This document shows positions 6,695 to 60,482 of a stretch of 64,000 bases of DNA, in pieces. Positions within the stretch are counted from its first letter, which is position 1; each line of letters opens with the position of its first letter. The position numbers and the translations under genes were made by a program. The stretch spans positions 1-64,000 of the IMG/VR virus record IMGVR_UViG_3300017917_001342; one strand, given 5' to 3'. Under the pieces are notes generated by a model that saw nothing but the letters and a program-made list of their open reading frames with translations, had not been told where the DNA came from and did not search any database.

Positions 6695-6706
6695 TAGGAA
6701 TACACA

Positions 6707-9780: not shown

Positions 9781-10166
9781 TCAACAATTCCGCCGTTGCG
9801 GCGGACTTCCTCAACAAATGTGTTGATTGCATCTTCGTTGTAGTTAGCTGTGTTGATACGCTGTGGTCCGTTGTCTCGCACACGGTCACAGAAATCTTTG
9901 GCTTCTTTAAGACCCCAACCGGTAAGCATGCGAACTGACTTAATGACATTAATAAAGTTGGGACCAGTTTCAGATACAACAATTTCATCGGTGTTTACCA
10001 GCATACCGAACATGATATCACCCGCAGCACGATCGCCTAGTGATTCACGAACTCGATCCCAGATGGCCATGCCTTGAGTATGACCATAGGTTTCACACAA
10101 GCTACGAATAAACGCACGGCAAGTCCGCACAACTGTCATGTTAGGTTTGTATTCGATCTCGTTCAT
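9777..10166 (-). CDS. Protein with ribosomal L7/L12 C-terminal-like domain
   Basis: INVIKSVRMLTGWGLKEAKDFCD matches the bL12 CTD signature; GGAG RBS. Confidence 0.7.
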   Translation of the reverse strand: MNEIEYKPNMTVVRTCRAFIRSLCETYGHTQGMAIWDRVRESLGDRAAGDIMFGMLVNTDEIVVSETGPNFINVIKSVRMLTGWGLKEAKDFCDRVRDNGPQRINTANYNEDAINTFVEEVRRNGGIVE

Positions 10167-10416
10167 AATTAACTCCTTTGGCCCACACTAACCTGAACAT
10201 AACACATTCGGATTCGCTAGTAAACCAGTATTTGTCGAACATTCTGTACCAGTTTTCTTCGCCTAGTACTTCATTACACCATTGTTCTATTTCAGTATGA
10301 TTATCAACAGTGTGCTTTTGACTCCAAAACAGTTTGTCAAGTTCTATTCGCGGATCATAGTTATGCCAACTGTTTCGCAATTTATATACTAAAGATTTTG
10401 GTGTCTGTGTGCTCAT
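10141..10416 (-). CDS. FxLxW-family microprotein (dispersed copy)
   Basis: IEQWCNEVLG...YWFTSESECVMFRLVW; ATG at 10416 preferred over TTG at 10515. Confidence 0.7.
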   Translation of the reverse strand: MSTQTPKSLVYKLRNSWHNYDPRIELDKLFWSQKHTVDNHTEIEQWCNEVLGEENWYRMFDKYWFTSESECVMFRLVWAKGVNYERDRIQT

Positions 10417-10538
10417 GCTAAGTATGTCATAAAGGAGTTTAGTTATGATGATTGGAATGATCGAATTTGTAGCTGACACAATAGTCGAATATATGATACA
10501 GCGTGAATCGCGCAAGCAAAATAAAACATCATTGCCTG

Positions 10539-11474
10539 TTAAAGAAACGACAACTCAATCAAACACGCAGCAAGGTTAATTTCAGGCTCTGCTACTAATG
10601 CATGGTCCTTGAGACGATTTGCAATAATCACAATGGCTTGATGCTGTTTTGCTTCCTCGTTGCTCCACCAGTTTAGATTGCGATACAGCATACGATAGAT
10701 TTCCTCATAGTCTTCTACTTTAGCCTGCGCACAGATCACGTTACGTGCATCATGAATCTTGCCCTGTTTGAACAAATTAATAGCTTGAATCATATAATCC
10801 ATGCCACCCATACTACCGCCCTTGTTAGGACGGTTCAACTTGCCATTTGAACAGTTTTGTTGTAGCAGGTTAATACACTTGCGAAGATCCGGGTATGTAG
10901 CAATGGTGTATTCATCCAGAATTTCAAGATTTTCTTCTGTAAGATCAATGCCTTCCGCAATCAGAATAGTAGCAATGCGTGTAACGAACAGTTCTCTATC
11001 TAAATGCTCGATATGAAAGCCTTGACAGCGACTGTGCAATGCTGGTATGATCTTGTGCGGCACATTACAAGTAAGAACCCAACGGCACACATTGCTGTAT
11101 TCTTCGATCATATTACGCAACATAGCCTGTGCGTTATGAGACAGATAATCAGCTTCGTCTAGTAACACATAACGGTAATCGCCCATTGGCATTGTTTCCA
11201 CAAAGCCCTGTAATGCACGTAGATGATCAATACCAGTATGTTGACTTGCATTAACGTATTTGATGTCCGACTCAACAACATCAAGTTCGTTAAACAGACA
11301 TTTTGCCAGGGTAGTTTTACCTATGCCGGGTCCACCGCTTAACAATAGGTTAGGAATATCCCTGTCGGCAATCCAACTCTCTACTTGAGTTTTTTGATTG
11401 TCGTTAACCCATACATAATCTGCAATGCTCTTTGGACGGTATTTTTCAACCCACAAAGTATTGGTCTTGCTCAT
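10539..11474 (-). CDS. Clamp loader subunit (RFC/T4 gp44-like AAA+)
   Basis: WVEKYRP, GPGIGKTT, LLDEAD, SRC motifs. Confidence 0.95.
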   Translation of the reverse strand: MSKTNTLWVEKYRPKSIADYVWVNDNQKTQVESWIADRDIPNLLLSGGPGIGKTTLAKCLFNELDVVESDIKYVNASQHTGIDHLRALQGFVETMPMGDYRYVLLDEADYLSHNAQAMLRNMIEEYSNVCRWVLTCNVPHKIIPALHSRCQGFHIEHLDRELFVTRIATILIAEGIDLTEENLEILDEYTIATYPDLRKCINLLQQNCSNGKLNRPNKGGSMGGMDYMIQAINLFKQGKIHDARNVICAQAKVEDYEEIYRMLYRNLNWWSNEEAKQHQAIVIIANRLKDHALVAEPEINLAACLIELSFL

Positions 11475-16839: not shown

Positions 16840-20802
<3,963 letters not shown>

Positions 20803-31308: not shown

Positions 31309-31724
31309 TATACAAATATAGTACGCAGTACTTTTGTAAGATCTCTGTTCAACATCTTAAATGCTGTATCATAATCAACAACTGCATAGTTGTCCATCTC
31401 CGGCGTCATTACACCATGATAGTCAAATAGACTAGGACAATGCAGTGTTTTAACATCCGGCATTTGCTCAACACTGTGTTTGAATAGCACAATTTGTTTG
31501 TTGTGTTTATATTCGTATTCACCTAGAAATTCAATTTGATCTATAGTCAATTCAATGCCGGTTTCTTCTGCTAGTTCACGTACAGCAGTTTCGGCAAATG
31601 ACTCACCGGGATCCTGTCGGCCTTTGGGAAGGTTCCATGTGACATTGTGTGTGGGATGGCAAATTAGCAATTGTGTACCATTGGTGATCAACACACCGCA
31701 GGTGATCTGTTTTGGTTTATTCAT
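31308..31724 (-). CDS. NUDIX hydrolase
   Basis: G..DPGE....TAVRELAEETG Nudix box. Confidence 0.93.
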   Translation of the reverse strand: MNKPKQITCGVLITNGTQLLICHPTHNVTWNLPKGRQDPGESFAETAVRELAEETGIELTIDQIEFLGEYEYKHNKQIVLFKHSVEQMPDVKTLHCPSLFDYHGVMTPEMDNYAVVDYDTAFKMLNRDLTKVLRTIFV

Positions 31725-32022
31725 ACGTCACGGGGCTCCATAGTGCTTTGAATTGTTCGGCTGTGTCTGACGACCTAAACAACACAGCCCCGCTAGGATG
31801 AATCAGATACTCTCTCGGTGAATGCTCTTGGCACCAATCCATAATAGCTGCGTGAGGATGCGTTGCATGATCATACAGTACAGCATACTTATAGCCCTTG
31901 TCAAGCCAAACATCATGAACTGCTATCTGACCATCACAAAAGAAACGATGTGCAATCCAACCCCTTGGCCTATGTATCCATTTGCTTTCAAAAATCTCAG
32001 CACCGAAAATTCTTACTCTCAT
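31717..32022 (-). CDS. FxLxW microprotein
   Basis: DWCQEH...FRSSDTAEQFKALWS. Confidence 0.8.
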   Translation of the reverse strand: MRVRIFGAEIFESKWIHRPRGWIAHRFFCDGQIAVHDVWLDKGYKYAVLYDHATHPHAAIMDWCQEHSPREYLIHPSGAVLFRSSDTAEQFKALWSPVTYE

Positions 32023-32282
32023 GAATACCTCAATACAAATGCCATACGTTGTTCAGCACTTTTAAACTCTACACTGCCTTTGTTGTCTATTAACTCTGCA
32101 TCATATTTTGCCAATTCGTCATCTGCAAGACTTCGCCAATAACGAAACGGCATACCGCTTCTACGAGTCATACCGTCGTAGTCTGCTATAATAGCAAGTT
32201 TAAAATTATCCCATAGGTCAGTGTCGACTATTTCAACAGTATAATTGTGCTTGGTAATACTGTATACTGTAAGTGAGTACAT
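32019..32282 (-). CDS. FxLxW microprotein
   Basis: FKSAEQRMAFVLRYS*. Confidence 0.75.
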   Translation of the reverse strand: MYSLTVYSITKHNYTVEIVDTDLWDNFKLAIIADYDGMTRRSGMPFRYWRSLADDELAKYDAELIDNKGSVEFKSAEQRMAFVLRYS

Positions 32283-32302
32283 ATTGACTTTTAAAGCTAA
32301 TA

Positions 32303-32551
32303 TTAACCCCAAATTAGTCTAAAATGCACAGCATCGGTAGGATCAGTAAATTTCATGTCTGTGACTAAAACTGTCGATTCACCTGGTTCGAGGCGTGAAT
32401 TTTTAAAATCAAAAAGTACATATTCTTGTGGTACAAAGCTTGGGCAATGATCTATTGCCCACTGTATAGCCATTCCTATACGTATTTTACCGTTTGTGCG
32501 GCCTTTAGAAGTGTCGAGTTCAAATTTCAAAGTTGTCATTTTTACATCCAT
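32303..32551 (-). CDS. FxLxW microprotein
   Basis: QWAIDHC...FTDPTDAVHFRLIWG*. Confidence 0.8.
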   Translation of the reverse strand: MDVKMTTLKFELDTSKGRTNGKIRIGMAIQWAIDHCPSFVPQEYVLFDFKNSRLEPGESTVLVTDMKFTDPTDAVHFRLIWG

Positions 32552-32742
32552 GTTAATTTAAATAGTGTTGCAAATTCATTAGTACTAAAATAGAAAGTTG
32601 CTGAACCACTGAGGTCGTAAGTGTAACTCCAATCTCTAACACTTTCACCGATATTGTCCTTACACCACAGTTTCATTTCGGTTCGTTGATCCATAGATAC
32701 GTTAATCACTGTAACAGGAAAATTATGATAATATACCATCAT
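32542..32742 (-). CDS. FxLxW microprotein
   Basis: WCKDNIG...FSTNEFATLFKLTWM*. Confidence 0.8.
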   Translation of the reverse strand: MMVYYHNFPVTVINVSMDQRTEMKLWCKDNIGESVRDWSYTYDLSGSATFYFSTNEFATLFKLTWM

Positions 32743-32948
32743 AGCCAAACCAGTTTAAACAGTGTTAGATCCTTTTGGCTAGTGAAATGCAATTCATATA
32801 CATAATCACTTGTTAAGCTAACGTCACTGACGTCAACAATTTTAAAACCATGGTAACAGCTACAGTTGTCTTTTGCCCACTGATCTATAGCTGACATTTC
32901 AGTAAGAGAAAACTGTGTGTCACTGAGATAGTAATCAATTACGTCCAT
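32739..32948 (-). CDS. FxLxW microprotein
   Basis: QWAKDNC...FTSQKDLTLFKLVWL*. Confidence 0.8.
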   Translation of the reverse strand: MDVIDYYLSDTQFSLTEMSAIDQWAKDNCSCYHGFKIVDVSDVSLTSDYVYELHFTSQKDLTLFKLVWL

Positions 32949-33172
32949 TTTAACACAAACTCAAACCATTTGTCATCGTCGTCGAACTGTATAAAGCGTT
33001 TGCGATTTTCCTGTTTAACAACACCGCCATGTTCAAACAACCAGTCTTCAAATTCATTAGTATGATGATGTCTTGACATACGTTGATATGAATAATGATA
33101 GTATGTGTTAAATCGCAGCGCCCGCCAACGATTATACACAGTGTCTAATTGATCGGGGGTTGTACGCTTCAT
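32939..33172 (-). CDS. FxLxW microprotein
   Basis: DWLFEHG...FDDDDKWFEFVLKWT*. Confidence 0.8.
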   Translation of the reverse strand: MKRTTPDQLDTVYNRWRALRFNTYYHYSYQRMSRHHHTNEFEDWLFEHGGVVKQENRKRFIQFDDDDKWFEFVLKWT

Positions 33173-33369
33173 GACAGACACGTTAATCTAAATGCAATAA
33201 GTAGATCTTGATTTTTGAAATAGAATACACGGCCAAGTTGAAGCCAATCTTCATACTCACAGTTTTCTGTACACCATGCAATCTGCTGCGGCGTCACAGA
33301 CGGTACATTGATATAATACCAACCTTCATCGTGCTCTATTACACCACGGTCATGATCTTCTGGGCTCAT
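33169..33369 (-). CDS. FxLxW microprotein
   Basis: WCTENC...FKNQDLLIAFRLTCLS*. Confidence 0.75.
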   Translation of the reverse strand: MSPEDHDRGVIEHDEGWYYINVPSVTPQQIAWCTENCEYEDWLQLGRVFYFKNQDLLIAFRLTCLS

Positions 33370-33641
33370 AGCAGTTTCAATCGAAATTCTAATAGCTGTT
33401 CTTCGTTATCAAATTCAATATACGGTCTTTTAACATCATTCATATAATTACCGTCGCTTATAAATCTAGGTGCTACTACAGTTATTTTGCAGGTGTAAGT
33501 GTCATTGAACCATCGCTCAAGTCCATAATAATAATTTGCATCTAACCATACACGCCGATTTGTATATTTTGCAATGTGATATGCGTCTTTTATTTTTTCG
33601 TATAGTACAGGATGGTCCTTTAATAACAATACAACAGTCAT
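33366..33641 (-). CDS. FxLxW microprotein
   Basis: FDNEEQLLEFRLKLL*. Confidence 0.75.
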   Translation of the reverse strand: MTVVLLLKDHPVLYEKIKDAYHIAKYTNRRVWLDANYYYGLERWFNDTYTCKITVVAPRFISDGNYMNDVKRPYIEFDNEEQLLEFRLKLL

Positions 33642-33922
33642 GACCACCTCAACTGAAATGCCAGCAGTGCAGCATCATCCTCAAACTTCAAATACCAATC
33701 GCCGTTGTCTTTAACCATTCTTCTCAACGACAAATTATAGACTTTACGGTCAGATTTTGTATGTCTGCACAATGTAACTTGATACGGTTCCTGTGCTAAC
33801 ACACTGTTAATATCGTCTTTGTGCAGTGGTCGTTTTAGTCCTGCACATTGTTGATGTATAAAATTTTGATAAGGCTTTGGTGATACTGCAACACCTGGCC
33901 CGAGCTCTAGTATTGCAACCAT
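33638..33922 (-). CDS. FxLxW microprotein
   Basis: FEDDAALLAFQLRWS*. Confidence 0.8.
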   Translation of the reverse strand: MVAILELGPGVAVSPKPYQNFIHQQCAGLKRPLHKDDINSVLAQEPYQVTLCRHTKSDRKVYNLSLRRMVKDNGDWYLKFEDDAALLAFQLRWS

Positions 33923-33923
33923 G

Positions 33924-34172
33924 TTAACTCCACGCCATTAGAAACATCAAACGATCAGCTTCTGTACGAAATGCATACCCGGGTCGTTCACGCTGGCCAG
34001 TTTTGTCTTTTATACGCTGCATTTCAATCCCTGCTTCTTCTGCCCACTTCTCCATGCTGTGAGAATAGATATAACTGAACGCTAACCATCCCATACCTGT
34101 TGCTCTTGCAACATAAGAGAATTCCTCGTCGATGTCAACAATGCCTTCTAGTCGAAATTTTAAGATGCCCAT
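33924..34172 (-). CDS. FxLxW microprotein
   Basis: KWAEE...FRTEADRLMFLMAWS*. Confidence 0.8.
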   Translation of the reverse strand: MGILKFRLEGIVDIDEEFSYVARATGMGWLAFSYIYSHSMEKWAEEAGIEMQRIKDKTGQRERPGYAFRTEADRLMFLMAWS

Positions 34173-34402
34173 GTTAGTGTAAACAGCGTAGCGTCCTCTG
34201 CGTTTTCAAACAGCCAACGATCGTGGTATGCTCGCCAATCTCCCTGTATGTTTTTCATCCAACTGCCAATGTCTTCTATAGCAACTTTATTTTGCACCAG
34301 TGTCCATCCGAGATTCAAGTAGTGCTGTGTACGAATTTCAGTCAGTACTTCTTTGTCGATTTCTTCTTGCAGTATTTTAGCGATATCATCTTCTATTGTC
34401 AT
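34160..34402 (-). CDS. FxLxW microprotein
   Basis: FENAEDATLFTLTWAS*. Confidence 0.8.
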   Translation of the reverse strand: MTIEDDIAKILQEEIDKEVLTEIRTQHYLNLGWTLVQNKVAIEDIGSWMKNIQGDWRAYHDRWLFENAEDATLFTLTWAS

Positions 34403-34719
34403 AACCAAGTTAACTTTGCTAATGTCGCAGCAGCACCTTTGCCTTTGCGTATCTTTATTAATGCTGCATTATTTGCATCTGTTGGCACATTGAGAATGTA
34501 CGCATTATATCGTGGATGTATAAACCATTGCCAATCAAAGCCTTGACGACCAACGTGCTCATCAAACCACGGTTTATAAACATCGTCTGGTGTAGTTTCT
34601 CTTACTGTGAATTTACTGTGATGTACCCAACCATTGGGCCATGGTAGCAGTAACTCGTAACCCGTCATGTATCGCCACCATAGTCTATGTCGCAATTGAT
34701 GTTTTAATAAGGTAACCAT
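34399..34719 (-). CDS. FxLxW microprotein (degenerate motif)
   Basis: PWFDEHVGRQGFDW...ATLAKLTWL*. Confidence 0.7.
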   Translation of the reverse strand: MVTLLKHQLRHRLWWRYMTGYELLLPWPNGWVHHSKFTVRETTPDDVYKPWFDEHVGRQGFDWQWFIHPRYNAYILNVPTDANNAALIKIRKGKGAAATLAKLTWL

Positions 34720-34931
34720 GTTAGCCTAAAGTACATGGCATCAGATTCTTTTTTAAAACGCCACCAACAGATGTTGGAAATGTTGTCGTTATAACAACTC
34801 CATTTGCCTCTGACATTTGCCCGCAGCCAATTGGTTACACGAAGCAGCACGTCTTGGTCATCAACTGATGCTGCAAACTCTATCCAACCTTCTGTATAGT
34901 CTGGAAACATCTGTTCTTTAGTCATCTTCAT
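34704..34931 (-). CDS. FxLxW microprotein
   Basis: WLRANV...FKKESDAMYFRLTWLPY*. Confidence 0.8.
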   Translation of the reverse strand: MKMTKEQMFPDYTEGWIEFAASVDDQDVLLRVTNWLRANVRGKWSCYNDNISNICWWRFKKESDAMYFRLTWLPY

Positions 34932-35210
34932 GATTCATCTGCATCCAGCTGAGTTTAAAGTAGGTTTCTGTTTCATCGTCTTTGAAACTGAGACGCAGAC
35001 TGTCTACGCTTTTGTCTATTTCAACAAACCAATCTCGATTAAATTCACCAATGTTAGCTTCTAGCCATGGCTGAGTTTTTTCATAAATTCAATGGCCAAA
35101 CTCAATTGCCTGTAACTCAATTCACTTTCAGCATAACCAAAATAGTTTGCTGGAATACGACCTAATTGAGCTTTTACTATTTCTTCTCGTATTGTATCTG
35201 TTATCCCCAT
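34918..35210 (-). pseudogene. Frameshift-split FxLxW microprotein gene (absent from ORF track)
   Basis: ATG 35210 frame stops at 35061; the -1 frame after the A6 run (35081-35076) reads TQPWLEANIG...FKDDETETYFKLSW...* to 34918. Confidence 0.7.
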
Positions 35211-35482
35211 ACCATCAACTCCTCAAAAGTAGTATACTGCCATTTGCAACTAGTGCGTCGATATTCTGCCCAACCATCTTGCCAAGTAATCTGACGGCGC
35301 ATCACAGTTTTCAACCACACAGTTTTACCCATTTTCATAGGATGGTCAACTGTAAAAATTTCATCTGTATACCAGTAAATCACTGTAACAGGCCGCCATG
35401 CAAACCATTGCTGCCACGGTCCAAATTCAACAGTGTTGTCTTGGTATATATGGCGATATAGTGTGTCTAGCGTATACGGCAT
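35201..35482 (-). CDS. Hypothetical (WFAWRPV motif) embedded in array 1
   Basis: Coupled ORF ending ...LMVWG*. Confidence 0.7.
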   Translation of the reverse strand: MPYTLDTLYRHIYQDNTVEFGPWQQWFAWRPVTVIYWYTDEIFTVDHPMKMGKTVWLKTVMRRQITWQDGWAEYRRTSCKWQYTTFEELMVWG

Positions 35483-35841
35483 TATGACCACAACAACGCA
35501 AACTGCATTGCAACAGTTTGATCCATAAACATTATCACATGCTGTGGATGTGATACATGCCTGCCAGGTGCATACTCGCTACACCAACCAAGAACATCTT
35601 GCCAACGATGAGTTTTATTATAAAACACAGGGTATTGATAACCTTCGTTATACCAAGAAATGTGAATTGCCACACGGTCGTTACAAAAATAACGATAGTA
35701 TGCTGGCAATTTATCTTTGAGACTTACCCACATGCTGTCTATACCAAACGTAACAACAGCACCTGGTTCGTCTACATGTATTTTACGAATATCTTTCTGT
35801 GTGAGATTTAGTCTTGCGGCACAGTGTGAAGTGTAACCCAT
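35482..35841 (-). CDS. FxLxW microprotein
   Basis: WCSEY...FMDQTVAMQFALLWS*. Confidence 0.8.
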   Translation of the reverse strand: MGYTSHCAARLNLTQKDIRKIHVDEPGAVVTFGIDSMWVSLKDKLPAYYRYFCNDRVAIHISWYNEGYQYPVFYNKTHRWQDVLGWCSEYAPGRHVSHPQHVIMFMDQTVAMQFALLWS

Positions 35842-36373: not shown

Positions 36374-37018
36374 TTAGAGGTTAGCGCAGTAGTCGTTGAA
36401 TTCTTGATCTTCTTGAATACCTGCTTCGCGCAGTTTGCCACGAGCAGCACTAGGTGTACCGTCATACATGAAGATATTATCACCGAGATTTTCAAACTCA
36501 AACGGTAGATCAATACGGCATTCTTCAGTGCAGCGTTGACGATGTTCATTCCAATAGCGCACTGGTACAATGTAAACAGCAGTAACTCGTTTGCCTAGCA
36601 CTGGAATTTTACTATAGGTAGCATAGAACAGATATTCTTCTGGGTCAACACTTAGCCAGCTACGTTCACCGTAGATAAATCCATCACCTTCAGTTTCTTC
36701 TGGCGGCATGTGTGCTGCGACAGGTTGCGTAACATCATCTGTATCATCTTCACTTGCAGAGTCGTCGGCATCTGTATCAGCAGCTTCATCTTCGGGATCA
36801 GGTAGATACTGATCTGGGATATCAAAATCGTGAATAGTCATAGGTTCTAGATCTTCAGTGCGGTAGCCAATGTCCGGATTGGTTTTGCAGAGTAGATCGA
36901 TACGTTTCTCTCGAGTAGCAGAATCTGCAAACACTTCGATCGGCGAATAGAAAATGTTGCAGTCTTCACGGTTACCGTGATCGTAGTCATAGATAAGAAC
37001 GTAAATCTTAGTAGTCAT
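36374..37018 (-). CDS. Hypothetical with acidic linker
   Basis: ORF, GAGG RBS. Confidence 0.7.
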   Translation of the reverse strand: MTTKIYVLIYDYDHGNREDCNIFYSPIEVFADSATREKRIDLLCKTNPDIGYRTEDLEPMTIHDFDIPDQYLPDPEDEAADTDADDSASEDDTDDVTQPVAAHMPPEETEGDGFIYGERSWLSVDPEEYLFYATYSKIPVLGKRVTAVYIVPVRYWNEHRQRCTEECRIDLPFEFENLGDNIFMYDGTPSAARGKLREAGIQEDQEFNDYCANL

Positions 37019-37373
37019 GGTCTTGTTCCTCAAGTTCTTTCACACGTTGTTGAGCAGCTTCTAGTGTTGGGTAACAGTCGTCAAAGTAAGGGTCGTTTTC
37101 AAAGTAGTATTCTACGTTGCCAGAGCTTTTATATTCGAAGTAATATTCATCCTGCTGGTCTTCCGGATTTGTTATCTTACCACGGCAGATTTTTACCACT
37201 GAGCCAACATACATGAGTTCATGTATTTTGTAAAGCCATGTAGGCCTATCATATCTATGCCATTCTACACCGTTGGCATCGATCATTTTTATTTTATGTC
37301 GTGTGAGTATAGAATTGATGTGTTCGATATGATATATCACATCGCCAAACTGCAATTTACCCAGGTCTATCAT
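37008..37373 (-). CDS. Hypothetical protein
   Basis: ATGA-coupled to 37370..37801. Confidence 0.7.
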   Translation of the reverse strand: MIDLGKLQFGDVIYHIEHINSILTRHKIKMIDANGVEWHRYDRPTWLYKIHELMYVGSVVKICRGKITNPEDQQDEYYFEYKSSGNVEYYFENDPYFDDCYPTLEAAQQRVKELEEQDHDY

Positions 37374-37801
37374 AGCCATACCATTTCGAACAGCAGATGA
37401 TCGTTGCGTTCTTTAAATGCAATTACAAAATGTTCTGCACCGCCTTGCACGGATGTAATATAAGTTGATGCGTTAAGGATGGTGTTTTTATCTCGTTTTA
37501 GTATTTTAACATCAACTCTGAATTTACCAACGCAGTTGTCTTTGCACCATTGTTTGATTTCTTTGTACTGATCATGATCAAAATCAACACCATGAAATCC
37601 ATAGTCTTTCAGTTTGGCACGAATCACAGTGGTATAACTATACCCATGATATTGTGTAGCAACAGTACCAAAGGATTTGTTTATGTCAGGGTCATAGACG
37701 TAGTGATACTCTTCCCAAGTAGAAACATTATGCCTTTCAAGAAATTTGCGTTCCTTGTAGGCATTGATATACCCGAGGATTCGTGCAAACCAGTTAGGCA
37801 T
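37370..37801 (-). CDS. FxLxW-family protein (dispersed copy)
   Basis: QWCKDNC...FKERNDHLLFEMVWL*; TGGCTATGA end. Confidence 0.8.
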   Translation of the reverse strand: MPNWFARILGYINAYKERKFLERHNVSTWEEYHYVYDPDINKSFGTVATQYHGYSYTTVIRAKLKDYGFHGVDFDHDQYKEIKQWCKDNCVGKFRVDVKILKRDKNTILNASTYITSVQGGAEHFVIAFKERNDHLLFEMVWL

Positions 37802-38447: not shown

Positions 38448-39113
38448 TTAACCTTTCTTAGTTGTTCGATTGTTCCATTGTGTAACTGTAGCACTGGCTT
38501 CACAGTTTTCGCAATGCACATAATACTCTGCATTACCACTGCGCATTACCGCAAGATCACTGCTGGCACAGAACGGACAGGGTTCAAGCGGAATGTCCCA
38601 GGCATATTGATCAAGTGCTCTAAGCGCAGCAACAAAATCACTTGGCCCAAACCAAGTGCTGATAGATTCTCTATGTGTGTTGTTTGCCCAAGCATCGTTA
38701 GCAATGTTGTCAAGTGCAAACTCTGCAAATGGTTGCAGTGCAGCTTTTAGCCTAGCGATGACATCATCTTGGCTGCGCTGCGGTGTATATGCAGCAGTAC
38801 CATTCAACAATGAAACTGCACTACTATAGGCAATACTACCGTATGGTAAATCAAGTGCGCGAAACTCTTCGCACATTGCAGCGAGCATAGCAGTTAGTTC
38901 ACTGTTGCGCTGAGACAATTCTGACACTGCTTGATTGCGTGCTGTGAGAATTGTGTTGTTGTGATGCAGTTGCGCACTGTTGCGAGTTTCTTGATCGGTC
39001 AGTGCTTGTCGCAACGCTGTTAGCTTGTAGATAGTTTCATTGGCATACTCGTTGCCATAAACGTGCAAGGCAGTACAGAGTTTCTTAACTGCGTCTTCGC
39101 TAATATCAATCAT
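38448..39113 (-). CDS. Hypothetical with C-terminal Lar-like zinc finger
   Basis: LEPCPFC...VHCENCEA...WNNR. Confidence 0.65.
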   Translation of the reverse strand: MIDISEDAVKKLCTALHVYGNEYANETIYKLTALRQALTDQETRNSAQLHHNNTILTARNQAVSELSQRNSELTAMLAAMCEEFRALDLPYGSIAYSSAVSLLNGTAAYTPQRSQDDVIARLKAALQPFAEFALDNIANDAWANNTHRESISTWFGPSDFVAALRALDQYAWDIPLEPCPFCASSDLAVMRSGNAEYYVHCENCEASATVTQWNNRTTKKG

Positions 39114-39408
39114 CGTGTTTCTGCGCTTTCCATTTTGCCAATTGTATACGAGCCTGTTTACGATGTTCAAGTGGCGTTGTCATCACAGTGACTATAACAT
39201 TGTCTTTTACTGCGAACAATAGATCATTGTCACCTATGTAGATCATACTGCGATGCAGTATGCCCTGGCGGTCAATGTAGCGTTTAAATCTTCCAGCAGT
39301 TTCATTACCTGGCATACTGCTTATTGCTTTGTTAATAGTAACGTCTACAGCACTTTTAACAACACCGCCACGTTCTCGCAAACGTTTCTCTGCATGTTTG
39401 GTTTTCAT
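39106..39408 (-). CDS. Hypothetical (T.HA..R..ER, RelE/BrnT-like fold possible)
   Basis: TKHAEKRLRER...IVTVM. Confidence 0.55.
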   Translation of the reverse strand: MKTKHAEKRLRERGGVVKSAVDVTINKAISSMPGNETAGRFKRYIDRQGILHRSMIYIGDNDLLFAVKDNVIVTVMTTPLEHRKQARIQLAKWKAQKHDD

Positions 39409-50822: not shown

Positions 50823-50912
50823 TGGCGGAGGGTGTGGGATTCGAACCCACGAGGGGCTTTCACCCCTGACGGTTTAGTAGACCGCTGTTTTCGACCGCTC
50901 AACCAACCCTCC
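50823..50912 (-). tRNA. tRNA-Ser, anticodon ACT
   Basis: GGAGGGT/ACCCTCC acceptor, GCGGT-CTACTAA-ACCGT anticodon arm, long variable arm, GTTCGAATC, G73, encoded CCA. Confidence 0.9.
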
Positions 50913-51707: not shown

Positions 51708-51784
51708 TGGCGGCCACGGTAGGACTCGAACCCACAACCTTCTCCTTAGGACGGAGCAGCTCTATCCAGTTGAGCTACGTAGCC
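51708..51784 (-). tRNA. tRNA-Arg, anticodon CCT
   Basis: GGCTACG/CGTGGCC acceptor, A20, GCTCC-GTCCTAA-GGAGA, GTTCGAGTC, CCA. Confidence 0.9.
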
Positions 51785-55182: not shown

Positions 55183-55209
55183 ATGCCGCCGACAGTTTTG
55201 TCAGCGGCA
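55183..55209 (-). terminator. Possible terminator hairpin
   Basis: TGCCGCTGACA-aaac-TGTCGGCGGCA followed by TTT. Confidence 0.45.
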
Positions 55210-55365
55210 AATTTGATTAATTTCGTCTGCGCTGCGATCAGACATAGCATAGCTGGCAAGACACTTGGATTGTTTTTCAGCTTTGGCATACTCGCTAACA
55301 GCAAGGCTACTAAACATTGCTATAATTGAAATAGCAGTTGCTATCATAAACCATTTAAATTCCAT
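55201..55365 (-). CDS. 54-aa single-TM protein (not in ORF track)
   Basis: MEFKWFMIATAISII...C...ICR*. Confidence 0.6.
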   Translation of the reverse strand: MEFKWFMIATAISIIAMFSSLAVSEYAKAEKQSKCLASYAMSDRSADEINQICR

Positions 55366-55366
55366 C

Positions 55367-55738
55367 TTAACGTCCTTTCAAACTTTCAACATAGCGATGA
55401 ACAAAATCGCAGAGGCTGTCGAATTCACTATAGACTTCGTTCAGGCCGCCACTGTGACCACGACTGTAGGCTTCGCCCCAAATCACACCGAATTCACTAT
55501 CGCAGAGTCCGTAATCTGCTTTGAGACGATCTTCAAATTCGCTCAGACGTTTACCAGCAGCAGTGCTGGCCGCTGCGCGAGCAGCTTCGTATTCTTTGAA
55601 TGCAACTTCGTAGGCTTCCAGTGCATCTGCATAAGCCCGTGCTTCGGCAGCCGTTGCACCATGTGCGATGCGCGGCTTTGTGGGTTTGGTAGGGTACACA
55701 ATGTCACGAGCATTGTAGTAGTTGAAATCGTAGCTCAT
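55367..55738 (-). CDS. Hypothetical protein
   Basis: AY..GHS.G..EV motif; AGGAG RBS. Confidence 0.75.
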   Translation of the reverse strand: MSYDFNYYNARDIVYPTKPTKPRIAHGATAAEARAYADALEAYEVAFKEYEAARAAASTAAGKRLSEFEDRLKADYGLCDSEFGVIWGEAYSRGHSGGLNEVYSEFDSLCDFVHRYVESLKGR

Positions 55739-55748
55739 TGTAGTCTCC

Positions 55749-55967
55749 TTATTCGCTCAGCGCAAACTGCATAAACAGCGGAGCAAGTTCGTGTTGCAGA
55801 GGTTTGCGAACACCGTAGGCAATGCAGCCAAAGCGAGTGTCCATGTCAATCTCATCTTTACCAACAGTATAGAACTTACCGTTGATACATTCAAGCACAG
55901 TTCCTTCGGGAATCTGTTGGTATTCATCAGGTGTAAACAACCACAGTTCTTCATCCCAACGCTGCAT
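55749..55967 (-). CDS. Hypothetical early protein
   Basis: AGGAG RBS; TTGACA-16-TATTGT starting 56020. Confidence 0.7.
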   Translation of the reverse strand: MQRWDEELWLFTPDEYQQIPEGTVLECINGKFYTVGKDEIDMDTRFGCIAYGVRKPLQHELAPLFMQFALSE

Positions 55968-56091
55968 AGCTTTCTCCTATGTTGTTACTTGCACAATACA
56001 ACATACTATGCGATTGTCAACCACATATAAAACAACGATATAAGAAAAAATCTGTTAATGATTTCAATGTGGTATTTTTATACTATTTGAT

Positions 56092-56382
56092 TTATAGCCA
56101 ACGCAACGCAAACAGCATTGCATCTTCTTTTCGATAGAACATAAACAGTGTACCACGGCCAGATTTATCTCTGGACGTCCACGGATATTCCGCACTCAAC
56201 GACCGCCATTGATTTTTCTTGTACAAGTCTGCCATTGCACCTATGTTATCTATTAGCCAACCTCGGCAACTGGCATTGTCTTCAGTCATTGGCAATATGA
56301 CTTTGTATATTGGACTGTCAGACAGACTAACAACTTCAACTGTGTTGCTAGGATATTTGATCAGTTTGGGGTCTAAATCCAT
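56092..56382 (-). CDS. FxLxW microprotein
   Basis: WLIDNIG...FYRKEDAMLFALRWL*. Confidence 0.8.
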   Translation of the reverse strand: MDLDPKLIKYPSNTVEVVSLSDSPIYKVILPMTEDNASCRGWLIDNIGAMADLYKKNQWRSLSAEYPWTSRDKSGRGTLFMFYRKEDAMLFALRWL

Positions 56383-56624
56383 CGCAGCATAAACTCCATG
56401 TATTCAGATTCACGATCAAATTCCAGTGTGTAGTTGTTTCTGTTACGATGTATAAACGTAATAAAACGTCCATAGGGATGCGATTCTGCCCAGGCTCGCA
56501 TTGCATCTATTGCAGCATCGTCGGCAAAACTTTCTGTACCGAGATACACAGACCAACATTCAGGACTTACTGTGTTCAGGCGTTCGAGTACGGTTCGCGG
56601 ATAATGTCTAGTAACAGTTATCAT
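56373..56624 (-). CDS. FxLxW microprotein
   Basis: FDRESEYMEFMLRWI*. Confidence 0.8.
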   Translation of the reverse strand: MITVTRHYPRTVLERLNTVSPECWSVYLGTESFADDAAIDAMRAWAESHPYGRFITFIHRNRNNYTLEFDRESEYMEFMLRWI

Positions 56625-56857
56625 GCATACCTCATCATAAACATCAAATGAGACTCAGCGTTTTCAAACCGCAATATGTAAAGATTAATTCTAGTACGCT
56701 CTAATGTTGCACAGTATTCGTCTTTTAATCTACGGTGCAGTACAGCACTTATATCTTTACACTTTGGATTTTCGTCGTCTAGTTCGTGAACAAAACGTTG
56801 CCACCATTCTGGGGCATCCATTAATGTACCTTTCATCTGATAACTGATTATAGCCAT
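56621..56857 (-). CDS. FxLxW microprotein
   Basis: FENAESHLMFMMRYA*. Confidence 0.8.
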   Translation of the reverse strand: MAIISYQMKGTLMDAPEWWQRFVHELDDENPKCKDISAVLHRRLKDEYCATLERTRINLYILRFENAESHLMFMMRYA

Positions 56858-57057
56858 CGCAACATAAACTCAACACGTTGTTCATCACTATCCCATTTAA
56901 CTTTTTTACCCAAATGACATCCTTGTGCAGCTAACCATTGTTCCCTGTTTGCATAATATACATTTGCATTAGCAACCTCACTATGCATCTTGTAATAATA
57001 ACGATGATATATCCGACAAATCAGTTTGCGTTCGGCATTGGGGTCAAGGCTACTCAT
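56848..57057 (-). CDS. FxLxW microprotein
   Basis: WDSDEQRVEFMLRWL*. Confidence 0.8.
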   Translation of the reverse strand: MSSLDPNAERKLICRIYHRYYYKMHSEVANANVYYANREQWLAAQGCHLGKKVKWDSDEQRVEFMLRWL

Positions 57058-57308
57058 AGCCACTCCATCATGAATAACATATGTCCTTCATCTGATGCAA
57101 ATTCCAACAGATGAGGTTTACCAAATATACCGTAGTCATAATATGCATCGTAGCGCAATTCAATCACAGAGTTAATATATTCAGCAAATTCTCGAGTATT
57201 ATCAACATTAATTTTAAGGTCTATCGCGTCTTCAACGTTATGTTCGATGAACCGTTGCCACCATTGCGGAACATCCCTGCGGCGAGTGTCTAACGTGTAG
57301 GTGATCAT
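57054..57308 (-). CDS. FxLxW microprotein
   Basis: FASDEGHMLFMMEWL*. Confidence 0.8.
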   Translation of the reverse strand: MITYTLDTRRRDVPQWWQRFIEHNVEDAIDLKINVDNTREFAEYINSVIELRYDAYYDYGIFGKPHLLEFASDEGHMLFMMEWL

Positions 57309-57526
57309 GACCACTCCAACATAAACAGTGTGTACAAACTTTCATTTGTGAATTTAACACATTCTTCGCCGGCATCTACTACTGACTGGTATCGAGTCAA
57401 TAATACATGATCAACATATCTCTCAATATTTTGATCTCTTGGCACAGTGTCTTGGCAATGTTCAATAAAATTAATCCACGGTTTTGGACATTTGTAGAGA
57501 TTATCTGGTAGCTGTATTAATATCAT
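57305..57526 (-). CDS. FxLxW microprotein
   Basis: FTNESLYTLFMLEWS*. Confidence 0.8.
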   Translation of the reverse strand: MILIQLPDNLYKCPKPWINFIEHCQDTVPRDQNIERYVDHVLLTRYQSVVDAGEECVKFTNESLYTLFMLEWS

Positions 57527-57783
57527 AGCCATGTAAGAAGGAACTGTGTCCGTTCTCCCTCTGTATTGAAGTATGCTAGATTGCTAATATTCCAAACACC
57601 ATGTTCATCGAGCCACTGTTTGATCTCGTCCATACGCTGTGCTTCTTCACTGTTGACACCAGCTTTGTATTCAAAGCGTATGCCAAACTGTTCAGGGCTT
57701 GGCTCAACTACCCAGACATCTTCTTCAACCTGATGTGGTGTTTCATTTTCAGGTAGATAAAATTTTACAAACTTAATTGCCAT
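57523..57783 (-). CDS. FxLxW microprotein
   Basis: QWLDEHG...FNTEGERTQFLLTWL*. Confidence 0.8.
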   Translation of the reverse strand: MAIKFVKFYLPENETPHQVEEDVWVVEPSPEQFGIRFEYKAGVNSEEAQRMDEIKQWLDEHGVWNISNLAYFNTEGERTQFLLTWL

Positions 57784-57786
57784 TGT

Positions 57787-57996
57787 TTATAACCATCTCA
57801 ATTTAAACAGCGTAGCAGTGTCCTTGTTTACAAATTCAAATACTGCACGATCAAAGTCGAATGGATGATACCGCCACGACCCCCATCGGTTAAACCCTTG
57901 CTCAGCCAACCATTCACAAGCACTTCTAACATCACTGTCGGCAATTACAACCTGATATCTATGTGGAGACGTAGTCCAGTAATCATTTGCAGTCAT
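57787..57996 (-). CDS. FxLxW microprotein
   Basis: EWLAEQG...FVNKDTATLFKLRWL*. Confidence 0.8.
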   Translation of the reverse strand: MTANDYWTTSPHRYQVVIADSDVRSACEWLAEQGFNRWGSWRYHPFDFDRAVFEFVNKDTATLFKLRWL

Positions 57997-58385
57997 AGCC
58001 AACTCATTTTAAACGCTAACGCATCTTCTTCATACGCAAACCAGAACAAGTTGTTTCTATATACAACAGAACCTAGTTTGCAGTTGTCTCGTATCCACCC
58101 TTGATAATCTGGGTAAGGGTCGTCGCCCCATCGCCATTGAACTTGCACGTATGAGTATCCAGCGGTTTTCATATCATCAACCCAATGAGTGCGCCTGCGA
58201 TTATTAAGACGCAGAAAGTGTTGATAATTCTGTTTAGTGAATTGCATACCGGTTTCATCAATATGGATTATTTTAGCAGGCACTATTGTATGACTATACA
58301 AGCTGTTAAGATCAAAGTTTAAGATATAGTTTTGTGCATGCTCTGTGATTTGAGTTGCAATTGAAGGATCATATAGCTGTGTCAT
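57993..58385 (-). CDS. FxLxW microprotein
   Basis: WIRDNC...FAYEEDALAFKMSWL*. Confidence 0.8.
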   Translation of the reverse strand: MTQLYDPSIATQITEHAQNYILNFDLNSLYSHTIVPAKIIHIDETGMQFTKQNYQHFLRLNNRRRTHWVDDMKTAGYSYVQVQWRWGDDPYPDYQGWIRDNCKLGSVVYRNNLFWFAYEEDALAFKMSWL

Positions 58386-58777
58386 AGCCAATGCATCTTA
58401 AACAGTACAGCATCGTTGTCATAGGCAAACCAAAAATAATTGTGTCCACTGACCCAGGTACCTGGTTTGAGGTTTGTGTTGCACCAATCGCGTTGTGCAA
58501 TATAACCGTTTGAAGTTTTAACATAGCTGTAACCCGCAGCTTTCAACTCGTCAAACCGCTGACGTTTTTTACGATTGTAGAGTCTTACAAAATGTTGATA
58601 GTGTGCTTTTTCCATATCAAATATTACAGCTATTTCATTTTTAAAAAATTCGTTCCAAAAATACAGTACCTGTGTTACACTCTTGCCAAGGCCTCTACTT
58701 TTTAAAACAGTTATCGTATGCGGCTTCATACCCTGTGTGGTCGGCATGAAGTAATCGCTTTCTATGTCTATTATCAT
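58382..58777 (-). CDS. FxLxW microprotein
   Basis: WCNTNL...FAYDNDAVLFKMHWL*. Confidence 0.8.
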   Translation of the reverse strand: MIIDIESDYFMPTTQGMKPHTITVLKSRGLGKSVTQVLYFWNEFFKNEIAVIFDMEKAHYQHFVRLYNRKKRQRFDELKAAGYSYVKTSNGYIAQRDWCNTNLKPGTWVSGHNYFWFAYDNDAVLFKMHWL

Positions 58778-58778
58778 G

Positions 58779-59042
58779 TTAGCCCCACACTAACTTAAAC
58801 TGTAACCTATGTTCTTCAGTGGCAAAATAAAATCGCAGCCAGTAACGTATCCACGATCCTTCTGGTAGATTTTCACTTGCCCAAGTATATGCGTCTCTGG
58901 TATTTCTAATAGACACTTTAACACAGGGATACTGATTGTCAATTAGATCTTGTATTACAATTGATTTGCGACGATTGTTAAGCCGTAAAAAATGCCTGTA
59001 GTATTTCTTACTAGCTAGTCTGGTGTCAAACTGTTTGGCCAT
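58779..59042 (-). CDS. FxLxW microprotein
   Basis: WASENL...FATEEHRLQFKLVWG*. Confidence 0.8.
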   Translation of the reverse strand: MAKQFDTRLASKKYYRHFLRLNNRRKSIVIQDLIDNQYPCVKVSIRNTRDAYTWASENLPEGSWIRYWLRFYFATEEHRLQFKLVWG

Positions 59043-59043
59043 G

Positions 59044-59706
59044 TCAACTCCACCATTGAGTTACAATCGGGCGCAGTTGATTGACTCCTTCGTTAAACAT
59101 AATACCATGTTGTGTGAGATACCAACGAATTTCAGTAGGCACTCCTGGTATCCAATCGTCGCGGCGACGCAGTAACTGATAATGTTCCCAAGGAATAGAT
59201 TTGCCGTTGCGGTCCATGATGTAGTTTGCCCATGGATAATGCCCGAAGGTTTTGTACACTGTGAAGTTGCGAGGACCAAATCCTTCTTCACTTTCACCTG
59301 GTTCACCCCGATCACCGCGAATACTTTCAAACGCATAGTCCATGTCGTCGTCGCTGCGATACCAACGTTTTCTAAAACAGAGATTTGGGTAGAACACAAT
59401 ATCACCGTAGTCGTCACCGTCGAAGGTAATACTAAAGAGATTTTCAGCTCTATCTGTTTTGCTTGTAGTTTTGAGATCTTCGTAGTCTGTTGCTAGCAAA
59501 CGTTTTTGAAAAACAAATGATGCACCGTCGTCACAAAACAGCGCACGATACAGTTTGGGATCAATTGTGAGATCTTCATCGGTTAATGCATTGAATGTGT
59601 TATAGAGCCATTCACTAACGTCTTTAACGTCTGGAGCACGACACAGTTCAACAAACTGTGCCCAAGGCATACCCCAACCCATGCTGCGTTTAATACGATA
59701 GTCCAT
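59044..59706 (-). CDS. Hypothetical protein
   Basis: 220-aa coupled ORF. Confidence 0.75.
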   Translation of the reverse strand: MDYRIKRSMGWGMPWAQFVELCRAPDVKDVSEWLYNTFNALTDEDLTIDPKLYRALFCDDGASFVFQKRLLATDYEDLKTTSKTDRAENLFSITFDGDDYGDIVFYPNLCFRKRWYRSDDDMDYAFESIRGDRGEPGESEEGFGPRNFTVYKTFGHYPWANYIMDRNGKSIPWEHYQLLRRRDDWIPGVPTEIRWYLTQHGIMFNEGVNQLRPIVTQWWS

Positions 59707-60037: not shown

Positions 60038-60460
60038 TTACGAGTTTTGTTGTAATCTGTTTTTAATTTCGATTTTCACATGTTCTGGTATATTAGGTAC
60101 AAAATTGAAAGTGAATTTTTTAGAATGAGTCTCGTAGGCCTTCCTGTATGCTCTATCGACTTGACTTTTTAACACGTCATTTGACGTCCATAATGTTACA
60201 AGTTTGTCAATTTCATTTTGTTCGTGTTCTATCAGAAGTTGTGGTGCACTTAACTCGTTGAGTTTTTTAACACGACTTTCATGCCATTCTAACTTATCTT
60301 TTATTTCTTGAATGGTAAATTTAATCGGTGTTTTAAATTTTGCCATATGACTATTGTACTGCTGATCATATTCTTGGTGCATACGATCAAATTCGGCATC
60401 GTAACTGGTCTGGTCTATTTCATACCAATAGTAATCTTCTGGGGGTGGTAGCATTCGCAT
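60038..60460 (-). CDS. Hypothetical protein
   Basis: AAGGA RBS. Confidence 0.7.
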   Translation of the reverse strand: MRMLPPPEDYYWYEIDQTSYDAEFDRMHQEYDQQYNSHMAKFKTPIKFTIQEIKDKLEWHESRVKKLNELSAPQLLIEHEQNEIDKLVTLWTSNDVLKSQVDRAYRKAYETHSKKFTFNFVPNIPEHVKIEIKNRLQQNS

Positions 60461-60482
60461 TATTATGTTCCTTTATTATTAA

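What the first reader, a model, noticed from the sequence alone, without database searches (positions are those of the whole stretch)
56092..58391. Recurrent DNA junction TGGYYATRA: the protein motif may double as coupling signal and cassette crossover site
Seen: 13 family genes end in TGG-YYA-TRA (TGGCTATGA at 32739, 37370, 57054, 57523, 57993, 58382; TGGTCATGA 33638, 57305; TGGTTATGA 34399; TGGCTATAA 56092, 56848; TGGTTATAA 57787; TGGTCATAA 35482). The next gene usually starts at the ATGA overlap or at A+TG of the Trp codon (32948, 34172, 34719, 35210, 56382, 56857). At several junctions the L/M-R/E codons supply a Shine-Dalgarno (TTGAGGTGG, TTGGAGTGG, ATGGAGTGG, ATGAGGTAT). Inference: each gene end carries the RBS and start for whatever follows, so microhomology recombination could add, delete or reorder genes while keeping expression, like an integrase-free cassette array.
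Basis: partly seen in the sequence, partly recalled or inferred. Interest (0 to 1): 0.8.

Follow-up and report, generated by a model that had tools for sequence, protein, structure and literature searches.

The report
Overlapped gene ends in phage paralog arrays
The repeated 9-base junction is the DNA footprint of about 29 tightly packed copies of one undescribed small phage gene family, each ending Trp-X-stop with the next gene's start codon built into that end; relatives gain and lose whole genes exactly at these ends, but nothing shows that the motif itself causes the exchange.

Summary
All 13 listed TGGYYATRA sites exist and each is the end of a minus-strand gene of one family. The window has 16 sites against 5.8 expected; the other 3 are chance or out of frame.

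The window is the first 64 kb of a 518,643-bp IMG/VR phage contig. It carries at least 29 members of an undescribed small-protein family with a beta-alpha-beta-beta-alpha fold, ending F-x-L-x-W-X-stop. The family has no Pfam, PHROG, PADLOC or PDB match, yet its profile finds 824 protein clusters, many in other huge phages.

Codon choice at the end is not background. Terminal Leu uses an NNA codon in 11 of 11 cases (p=5e-5), and every TGA stop (13 of 13) forms an ATGA overlap with the next start. About 40% of junctions also carry an SD-like sequence.

In six relatives gene order is always collinear but content is not. B11, B5, B5+B4 and a B2 duplicate are present or absent stop-to-stop, flanked by 13-15-nt imperfect direct repeats. 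Allele-replacement patches end inside genes about as often as at junctions. Non-family genes nearby show equally clean whole-gene indels.

Best reading: a tandem paralog family with translational coupling and ordinary birth-and-death evolution. The crossover-site role is possible but not shown.

The parts
58779..59042 (-). B11, family member (87 aa), ends VWG-TAA followed by C-ATG. Absent in relatives L017 and L009.
   Evidence: HMM E=6e-14
58382..58777 (-). B10, family member (131 aa), ends TGGCTATGA (ATGA overlap with B9). Its N-terminal 160 nt is a divergent patch against L017.
57993..58385 (-). B9, family member (130 aa), ends TGGCTATGA. Closest paralog of B10 (45% identity).
57787..57996 (-). 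B8, minimal family member (69 aa), ends TGGTTATAA. Modelled as beta-alpha-beta-beta-alpha.
57523..57783 (-). B7, family member (86 aa), ends ACATGGCTATGA, which offers two in-frame ATGs for B6.
57305..57526 (-). B6, family member (73 aa; alternative start at 57532), ends TTGGAGTGGTCATGA. This is the left repeat of the B5 indel.
57054..57308 (-). B5, family member (84 aa), ends ATGGAGTGGCTATGA. Absent in L014, L009, L008 and L005.
56848..57057 (-). B4, family member (69 aa), ends CGATGGCTATAA; the B3 start is the ATG at 56857. Three divergent alleles occur in close relatives; absent in L009, L008 and L005.
56621..56857 (-). B3, family member (78 aa), ends AGGTATGCATGA (Tyr in place of Trp; SD-like plus ATGA).
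56373..56624 (-). B2, family member (83 aa), ends CGATGGATTTAG; the B1 start is the ATG at 56382. L005 carries a tandem duplicate of it (new98).
56092..56382 (-). B1, last member of array B (96 aa), ends TGGCTATAA with no gene overlapping it. Its N-terminal 60 nt is replaced in L017 and L014.
31717..35841 (-). Array A: 16-17 family members (A1-A16) with the same kinds of junction. It includes a member split by a frameshift at an A6 run (34918-35210).
37370..37801 (-). A18, family member (143 aa), ends TGGCTATGA. It overlaps the start of a non-family gene (37008-37373).
10141..10416 (-). Isolated family member outside the arrays, with a 14-residue tail after the motif Trp.
   Evidence: HMM E=1.4e-8
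59044..59706 (-). 220-aa conserved gene upstream of array B. It ends TGGAGTTGA-C-ATG, the left repeat of the B11 indel. Homologues occur in relatives without arrays.
55201..55967 (-). Three conserved non-family genes (72, 123 and 54 aa) downstream of array B, followed by a terminator-like hairpin at 55184-55209.

Best explanation
The junction is a by-product of gene architecture, not an element in its own right. The window carries two arrays, plus strays, of a large and previously undescribed family of small phage proteins. The domain is about 60 aa with a beta-alpha-beta-beta-alpha fold, and its last helix ends F-x-L-x-W followed by exactly one residue and the stop.

The genes are packed so that the next start codon is written into that end. 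Usually this is NNA-TGA, giving an ATGA overlap. Sometimes it is A-TGG, with the start inside the Trp codon, or TAA-TG. Arg or Glu codons two positions before the Trp often supply a GAGG/GGAG Shine-Dalgarno. This forces third-base A in the last codon and TGA as the stop, which yields TGG-YYA-TRA.

Inferred: the arrays are read by termination-reinitiation, that is, translational coupling.

Shown by comparison: the arrays grew by local tandem duplication. Among relatives they evolve by whole-gene gain and loss and by replacement of segments with divergent alleles, with gene order unchanged.

Inferred: the conserved 15-35-nt coding block at each gene end is the best short homology available for such in-register exchanges. 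Selection then keeps only products that preserve intact, coupled genes. So the motif is a permissive substrate and a survivor filter, not a dedicated crossover signal. The proteins' function is unknown; the most likely guess is accessory host-interaction or takeover modules with variable N-terminal parts.
For: Family is real. Twenty-seven ORFs align to one domain. The HMM recovers 28 ORFs in the window. The AlphaFold model has pLDDT 86.8. The profile finds 824 clusters at E<=1e-3. In 101 of the 150 best, exactly one residue follows the motif Trp.

Architecture. Every TGA stop is part of an ATGA overlap (13 of 13), and non-NNA last codons always pair with TAA or TAG (p=0.002). ATGA occurs in 13 of 27 family genes against 3 of 32 other genes (p=0.001). 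SD-like duplexes occur at 12 of 28 junction starts against 10% of random positions (p=8e-4). The same packing is seen in unrelated phages: ATGA in 27 of 71 non-seed family ORFs against 338 of 2385 background ORFs (p=1e-6).

Duplication. The closest paralogs are neighbours: B10-B9-B11 and B3-B5-B6. new98 in L005 shares both termini with the adjacent B2.

Flux. B11, B5, B5+B4 and new98 are present or absent stop-to-stop. Gene-length strings of two further contigs show one extra gene in array B and three missing genes in array A. A3 is replaced by another member in L015. Order is collinear in all relatives.
Against: Translation coupling, transcript structure and expression are not measured. Selection for intact genes cannot be separated from a mechanistic preference for the junction. 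Terminal synonymous sites are somewhat more conserved between orthologues than gene bodies: 73% against 55% for window versus L009 (p=0.08), and 11 of 11 against 94 of 150 for L009 versus L005 (p=0.009). That leaves room for an extra DNA-level constraint. CTA is preferred over TTA 9 to 2, which ATGA alone does not require. Four NNA-TAA ends have no ATGA. The direction of each indel (gain or loss) is unknown.
Confidence: 0.75

Rival explanations
1. One reading: the junction block is a functional recombination joint. Microhomology between gene ends actively drives the addition, deletion and reordering of expression-ready cassettes. It would be an integrase-free analogue of integron attC sites or of the T4-type PeSL cassettes.
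For: All four DNA-resolved whole-gene indels are bounded by imperfect direct repeats centred on the junction: 10 of 13, 12 of 15, 9 of 13 and 12 of 13 matches. In L014, identity to the window runs unbroken for 34 nt up to the TGA of B6 and then stops. Two patch ends lie at a junction or within 40 nt upstream of one. The multi-copy direct repeats of array B are all anchored on gene ends. Terminal synonymous sites are more conserved than gene bodies.
Against: No reordering was seen in six relatives. Four of seven patch boundaries lie well inside genes, so there is no enrichment once whole-gene indels are excluded. Clean whole-gene indels also occur at non-family genes without the motif: a radical SAM gene, an RNase H gene and the ORF at 60038-60472. 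The repeats are short and degenerate, with the longest exact match about 14 nt. Even the closest paralogs are at most 45% identical, so turnover is slow. No recombinase gene lies next to the arrays among the 20 large ORFs scanned.
Confidence: 0.2
2. Concerted evolution: gene conversion among paralogs keeps the ends alike, so the shared junction reflects homogenisation rather than selection on coupling.
For: The gene-end blocks are the most similar DNA among paralogs. Short islands of identity sit around junctions and are flanked by divergence, for example the B6 end in L014.
Against: The blocks are only 64-87% identical, and they differ at exactly the positions the protein motif allows. The strict pairing of TGA with NNA points to selection for the overlapping start. 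The same architecture is found in unrelated phages.
Confidence: 0.04
3. Chance or compositional artefact, or the ORFs are not real genes.
For: None beyond the three out-of-frame hits.
Against: Zero of 100 shuffles reach 16 hits. Orthologues are conserved at 44-100% amino-acid identity while synonymous sites are near saturation. The fold prediction is confident. The family has 824 homologous clusters.
Confidence: 0.01

Closest known systems
PeSL-mediated modular shuffling in hyperplastic regions of T4-type phages (Arbiol et al. 2010, PMC2839356; follow-up PMC4122927)
   Same: Small non-essential genes of unknown function are clustered in variable regions. Close relatives differ by insertion, deletion and replacement of whole genes. 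A short conserved sequence recurs at gene boundaries, carries expression signals, and is proposed as the recombination substrate.
   Different: PeSLs are intergenic promoter plus stem-loop terminator cassettes. Here there is no intergenic space. The recurring block is coding (the C-terminal helix plus stop/start overlap), and it carries translation signals, not transcription signals. No promoter or terminator enrichment was found. Mini-circles were not tested.
Translational coupling through ATGA and other overlapping stop/start codons in bacterial and phage operons (established knowledge)
   Same: Four-base ATGA overlaps, with an SD embedded in the end of the upstream gene.
   Different: Here the overlap is tied to a conserved protein C-terminus shared by about 29 paralogs. 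The same 9-mer therefore recurs, and sometimes the start is nested in the conserved Trp codon itself.
Integron gene-cassette arrays
   Same: Arrays of short, co-oriented, promoterless genes whose content varies between relatives.
   Different: No integrase was found among the ORFs scanned. There are no attC-like imperfect inverted repeats at gene ends. The cassettes are paralogs of one family. No reordering was seen.
Illegitimate-recombination-plus-selection model of phage mosaicism, and the 'boundary sequences' of lambdoid phages (recalled knowledge, not checked in the library)
   Same: Mosaic joints appear at gene boundaries because only such products survive. Non-family genes in this region show the same clean indels.
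   Different: Within the arrays, short homology is actually present at both ends of every resolved indel. Homology-assisted exchange is therefore at least possible.
Tandem paralog families of jumbo and huge phages
   Same: Large lineage-specific expansions of small ORFans. Family members also occur in other 290-607-kb contigs.
   Different: This family has no Pfam, PHROG, PADLOC or PDB counterpart and has a fixed Trp-X-stop end.

Membership tests
Integron-type cassette array | Tyrosine-recombinase integrase (IntI) adjacent to the array | tested here: not met
   Pfam scans of 20 large ORFs in the window found no integrase or recombinase. The genes flanking the arrays are a 220-aa unknown, ClpP and NUDIX.
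Integron-type cassette array | attC: imperfect inverted repeat at the 3' end of each cassette | tested here: not met
   Seven weak inverted repeats in 56000-59100, none recurring at gene ends.
PeSL regulatory cassettes (T4-type hyperplastic regions) | Intergenic sigma-70-like promoter followed by a stem-loop terminator between the shuffled genes | tested here: not met
   The genes overlap by 1-14 nt. Promoter-like sites number 18 against 16.3 expected and terminator-like sites 5 against 3.5; none is periodic.
PeSL regulatory cassettes (T4-type hyperplastic regions) | Indels and replacements between close relatives bounded by the repeated element | tested here: inconclusive
   Whole-gene indels are bounded by the junction block. 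Patch replacements are bounded by it only partly: 3 of 7 lie within -40 to +15 nt (not significant).
Translationally coupled operon | Stop of the upstream gene overlaps or abuts the start of the downstream gene, with an SD inside the upstream gene | tested here: met
   Thirteen ATGA overlaps, about nine ATGG-type starts and TAATG types. SD-like duplexes of -4 kcal/mol or stronger at 12 of 28 starts.
Translationally coupled operon | Downstream translation depends on upstream translation | not testable with these tools
   Needs ribosome profiling or reporter assays.
Tandem paralog family evolving by birth and death | Members are homologous | tested here: met
   HMM E-values from 1e-5 to 1e-16 for 28 ORFs, shared fold model.
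Tandem paralog family evolving by birth and death | Nearest paralogs are physical neighbours, and copy number differs among relatives | tested here: met
   One search shows neighbours are closest, with A1-A16 as the exception.
Any described protein family (Pfam, PHROGs, PADLOC, PDB) | Significant profile or fold match | tested here: not met
   Searches gave nothing above threshold. Best Foldseek PDB E-value was 0.19. BFVD and AFDB gave only uncharacterised phage proteins at E of about 5e-3.

The most novel reading that the evidence does not exclude
The conserved coding block at each gene end (the last helix, Trp-X-stop and the embedded start and SD) acts as a portable, expression-ready recombination joint. 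In huge phages, in-register exchange between these blocks would be the main route by which members of this family are added, lost and swapped between genomes. That would be a translation-level, coding counterpart of PeSL or attC elements. The strict 'one residue after Trp' rule across 824 clusters would then be maintained partly for this purpose.
Probability: 0.2. Interest if true: 0.6.

Novelty: new variant of a known kind. Interest (0 to 1): 0.4.

Why it matters
If only the conservative reading holds, the result is a clean annotation. It explains a striking DNA repeat, corrects the start codons (the 'MAM' and 'MVM' N-termini come from calling the longest ORF), and defines a widespread, unnamed small-protein family of large phages that deserves a family entry and functional work.

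It also gives a concrete, well-resolved example of gene-level turnover in a megaphage accessory region. Background identity is 97-100%, with whole genes missing stop-to-stop.

If the junction blocks do promote exchange, that would bear on the old question of whether phage mosaic joints arise at special sequences or are only filtered by selection. This system makes the question testable, because it offers many near-identical joints in one array.

Tried and rejected
- Megablast of the array and tblastn of a 934-aa neighbour and of a consensus-like family member against 50,697 cultured phage records found nothing. Only the 220-aa flank hits Rhizobium and Ochrobactrum phages.
- IMG/VR relatives of the 220-aa gene (L002 and L003, 52% and 36% identity) have no array beside it. 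The 123-aa flank finds only the window's own contig in IMG/VR.
- The family alignment was too degenerate for the search for related loci.
- Two informative Logan contigs gave gene tables but no DNA. The look-ups for P0012 and the NUDIX protein added nothing useful.
- The promoter and terminator scan was uninformative.
- Literature searches for the motif strings and for huge-phage paralog arrays found nothing relevant.
- Stop-codon recoding was considered and dropped. Long ORFs are intact under table 11, TGA stops are followed by out-of-frame starts, and no suppressor tRNA was found.
- A chimeric origin of the B3-like gene of L009 by B5 x B3 deletion was considered and rejected. Its N-terminus is B3-like and its C-terminus B5-like, the opposite of the expected deletion product.
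- A C-terminal degradation tag linked to the neighbouring ClpP was considered. It was not pursued, because the Trp packs in the modelled helix and the neighbours differ in other phages.
Full report
**What the window is**
The 220-aa protein at 59044-59706 matches IMGVR_UViG_3300017917_001342 at 100% identity. That contig is 518,643 bp and window coordinates equal contig coordinates, so this is the first 64 kb of a megaphage-sized contig. Neighbouring genes are typical accessory and replication functions of a large phage. They include a collagen-repeat fibre protein, a Peptidase_S74 chaperone, a radical SAM/B12 enzyme, RNA ligase, amidoligase, an SF1 helicase, a clamp-loader-like AAA+ protein, NUDIX, ClpP and two tRNAs.

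**Checking the observation**
TGGYYATRA occurs 16 times against 5.8 expected, and none of 100 shuffles reaches 16. Each one is Trp, last codon and stop of a minus-strand ORF. The other three hits are out of frame inside larger ORFs.

The ORFs form two arrays:
- Array B, 56092-59042, with 11 genes.
- Array A, 31717-35841, plus 37370-37801.

An HMM built from the family recovers 28 ORFs in the window. These include an isolated member at 10141-10554 and a piece at 34918-35088. Together with the 49-aa ORF at 35061-35210, that piece looks like one member split by a frameshift at an A6 run. A relative has a 104-aa gene at that position.

**What the genes are**
The members share 15-45% identity. They have a common pattern: a Trp-containing helix (often W-C-x-D/E-N-C), a strand F-x-F, an acidic turn, and a final helix D-A-x-x-F-K-L-R-W followed by one residue.

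The 69-aa member B8 folds with pLDDT 86.8 into beta-alpha-beta-beta-alpha. No solved structure matches convincingly; the best Foldseek E-value is 0.19. BFVD, AFDB and the ESM Atlas return only uncharacterised phage proteins. Pfam, PHROGs, PADLOC and the PDB sequence search return nothing.

The family is nevertheless large. The profile finds 824 clusters at E<=1e-3 among 1.84 billion representatives. In 101 of the 150 best, exactly one residue follows the motif Trp, most often G, L, S or A. Some hits are two-domain proteins, which look like fused neighbours.

Trp-X-stop is therefore a property of the protein family, not of this genome.

**Why the DNA is more uniform than the protein requires**
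Terminal codons deviate from background:
- Leu uses CTA or TTA in 11 of 11 cases (expected 0.405, p=5e-5).
- Leu uses CTA in 9 of 11 (expected 0.205, p=2e-5).
- Ser uses TCA in 5 of 7 (expected 0.18, p=0.003).

The reason is visible in the junction table. All 13 TGA stops follow an NNA codon and so make ATGA, and a downstream ORF starts at that ATG. All eight non-NNA last codons pair with TAA or TAG (Fisher p=0.002). ATGA ends occur in 13 of 27 family genes against 3 of 32 other genes in the window (p=0.001).

The 'MAM' and 'MVM' N-termini in raw ORF lists arise because an NTG six bases upstream of the ATGA is in frame. At two junctions both are ATG.

SD-like pairing to a generic anti-SD is -4 kcal/mol or stronger at 12 of 28 junction starts. 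The figure is 10% for random positions and 15 of 29 for other genes.

The same packing is seen in unrelated phages. Arrays in L010 and L011 end TTTAAATT...TGG...TGA. Among family ORFs in IMG/VR loci that were not the seed of the search, 27 of 71 end in ATGA against 338 of 2385 background ORFs (p=1e-6). Several of those loci come from other 290-607-kb contigs, and one (L050) has 11 members in 2.8 kb.

**Comparison with relatives**
Close relatives are rare, but six contigs with DNA were recovered, plus two with gene tables only. Array B compares as follows:

| Source | Genes present, in order |
|---|---|
| Window | B11-B10-B9-B8-B7-B6-B5-B4-B3-B2-B1 |
| L017 | lacks B11 |
| L014 | lacks B5 |
| L009, L008 | lack B5 and B4; L009, the only one of the two that reaches that end, also lacks B11 |
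| L005, L006 | B6-B3-new98-B2-B1, where new98 shares both termini with B2 |
| SRR15144438 (gene table only) | one extra 76-aa gene |

In array A, one relative lacks three genes and another has a different member in place of A3. Order is never changed.

**Breakpoints**
Window and L017 are 97-100% identical over most of the array, which makes breaks sharp.
- B11 is missing exactly between TGGAGTTGACATG and TGGGGCTAACATG.
- B5 is missing in L014 exactly between TTGGAGTGGTCATGA and ATGGAGTGGCTATGA.
- The B5+B4 gap and the new98 duplication are likewise bounded by junction blocks.

There are also three replacement patches of about 50-65% identity. Their ends lie at 58618 (inside B10), 57253 (inside B5), about 56880-56861 (the C-terminal motif of B4), 56377 (the B2/B1 junction) and about 56322 (inside B1). 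L014 has one further patch, inside B6.

Four of ten boundaries lie within 15 nt of a junction (p=0.018). Only one of seven does once whole-gene indels are excluded, because those must end at gene ends by definition.

The window and L017 also differ by clean whole-gene indels of non-family genes that have no such motif. These are a 431-aa radical SAM gene, an RNase H gene and the ORF at 60038-60472.

The repeats at gene ends are the only multi-copy direct repeats in array B. They are 64-87% identical over 21-36 nt, and the longest exact match is about 14 nt. Synonymous sites in the last eight codons are somewhat more conserved between orthologues than the rest, as expected for overlapping frames.

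**Origin of the arrays**
The most similar paralogs are neighbours: B10-B9-B11 and B3-B5-B6. The one exception is A1-A16, at opposite ends of array A. The best pair is only 45% identical, so duplications are old and there is no sign of ongoing homogenisation.

**Conclusion**
The recurrent 9-mer is real and non-random. It is best explained as the overlap of two constraints: a family-wide protein C-terminus and an embedded start (and often an SD) for the next gene.

The arrays do vary by whole genes, and every resolved indel is flanked by the junction blocks. But three findings leave a dedicated crossover role unproven: no reordering was seen, many patch breakpoints fall inside genes, and equally clean indels occur at genes without the motif. 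The simpler account is short-homology or illegitimate exchange followed by selection for intact, coupled genes.

The nearest described phenomenon is PeSL-mediated shuffling in T4-type phages (PMC2839356). This case differs in that the shared boundary is coding and translational rather than intergenic and transcriptional.

Noticed in passing
window 34918-35210 (-): A family member appears split by a frameshift at an A6 run (around 35070) into a 49-aa ORF and a start-less 56-aa ORF. A relative has a single 104-aa gene there. This could be a sequencing error, a pseudogene or slippage.
   Followed up: partly
window 10141-10554 (-): An isolated family member lies just downstream of a clamp-loader-like AAA+ gene, with a 14-residue extension after the motif Trp.
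   Followed up: partly
whole window; contig IMGVR_UViG_3300017917_001342: The window is the first 64 kb of a 518,643-bp viral contig. Close relatives are rare in public data: a handful of short Logan, NCBI and JGI contigs and no cultured phage.
   Followed up: partly
L017:5764-7059 and 4156-4671; window 60038-60472: The close relative L017 carries a 431-aa radical SAM gene on the opposite strand and an RNase H gene that the window lacks. The window has an ORF of about 140 aa that L017 lacks. All are clean whole-gene indels in otherwise 90-98% identical DNA.
   Followed up: partly
L050 (IMGVR_UViG_3300046616_000314, 561 kb contig); also L040, L054, L066, L081, L082: Other huge-phage contigs (290-607 kb) carry arrays of the same family. 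L050 has 11 members in 2.8 kb, several ending AAATGGCTATGA.
   Followed up: partly
P0008, P0009, P0010, P0013, P0016, P0019 and others: Two-domain proteins made of two family domains joined by a short linker. They look like fusions of adjacent array genes after loss of the stop.
   Followed up: no
window 16840-20802 (-): A 1320-aa protein with long collagen triple-helix repeats. The region has locally high GC (0.52 against about 0.42).
   Followed up: no
window 116-7639 (+): A 2192-aa ORF followed by a 310-aa protein with a Peptidase_S74 (endosialidase chaperone) domain. This is likely a fibre or spike module, on the opposite strand to most genes.
   Followed up: no
window, 32 large ORFs: TAG is not used as a stop in any of the 32 large ORFs (TAA 25, TGA 7). 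It ends two small family ORFs. No suppressor tRNA was found; the only tRNAs are Ser(ACT) and Arg(CCT) at 50823-50912 and 51708-51784.
   Followed up: partly
window 59044-59706 (-) and homologues in L002, L003, Rhizobium phages RHph_N1_10, N1_15 and N2_6, and Ochrobactrum phage vB_OspM_OC: The conserved 220-aa gene upstream of array B also ends Trp-Trp-Ser-stop. Its homologues occur in phages of Alphaproteobacteria, which is a weak hint about the host. Whether its C-terminus is related to the family was not tested.
   Followed up: no
window 31717-32022 and 35482-35841 (-): A1 and A16, at opposite ends of array A, are each other's closest paralogs (36% identity, E=3e-18), unlike the neighbour rule seen elsewhere.
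   Followed up: no
window 38448-39170 (-): A 240-aa protein with a C-terminal Lar-like restriction-alleviation zinc-ribbon match, just below the Pfam cut-off. It lies between the two arrays.
   Followed up: no
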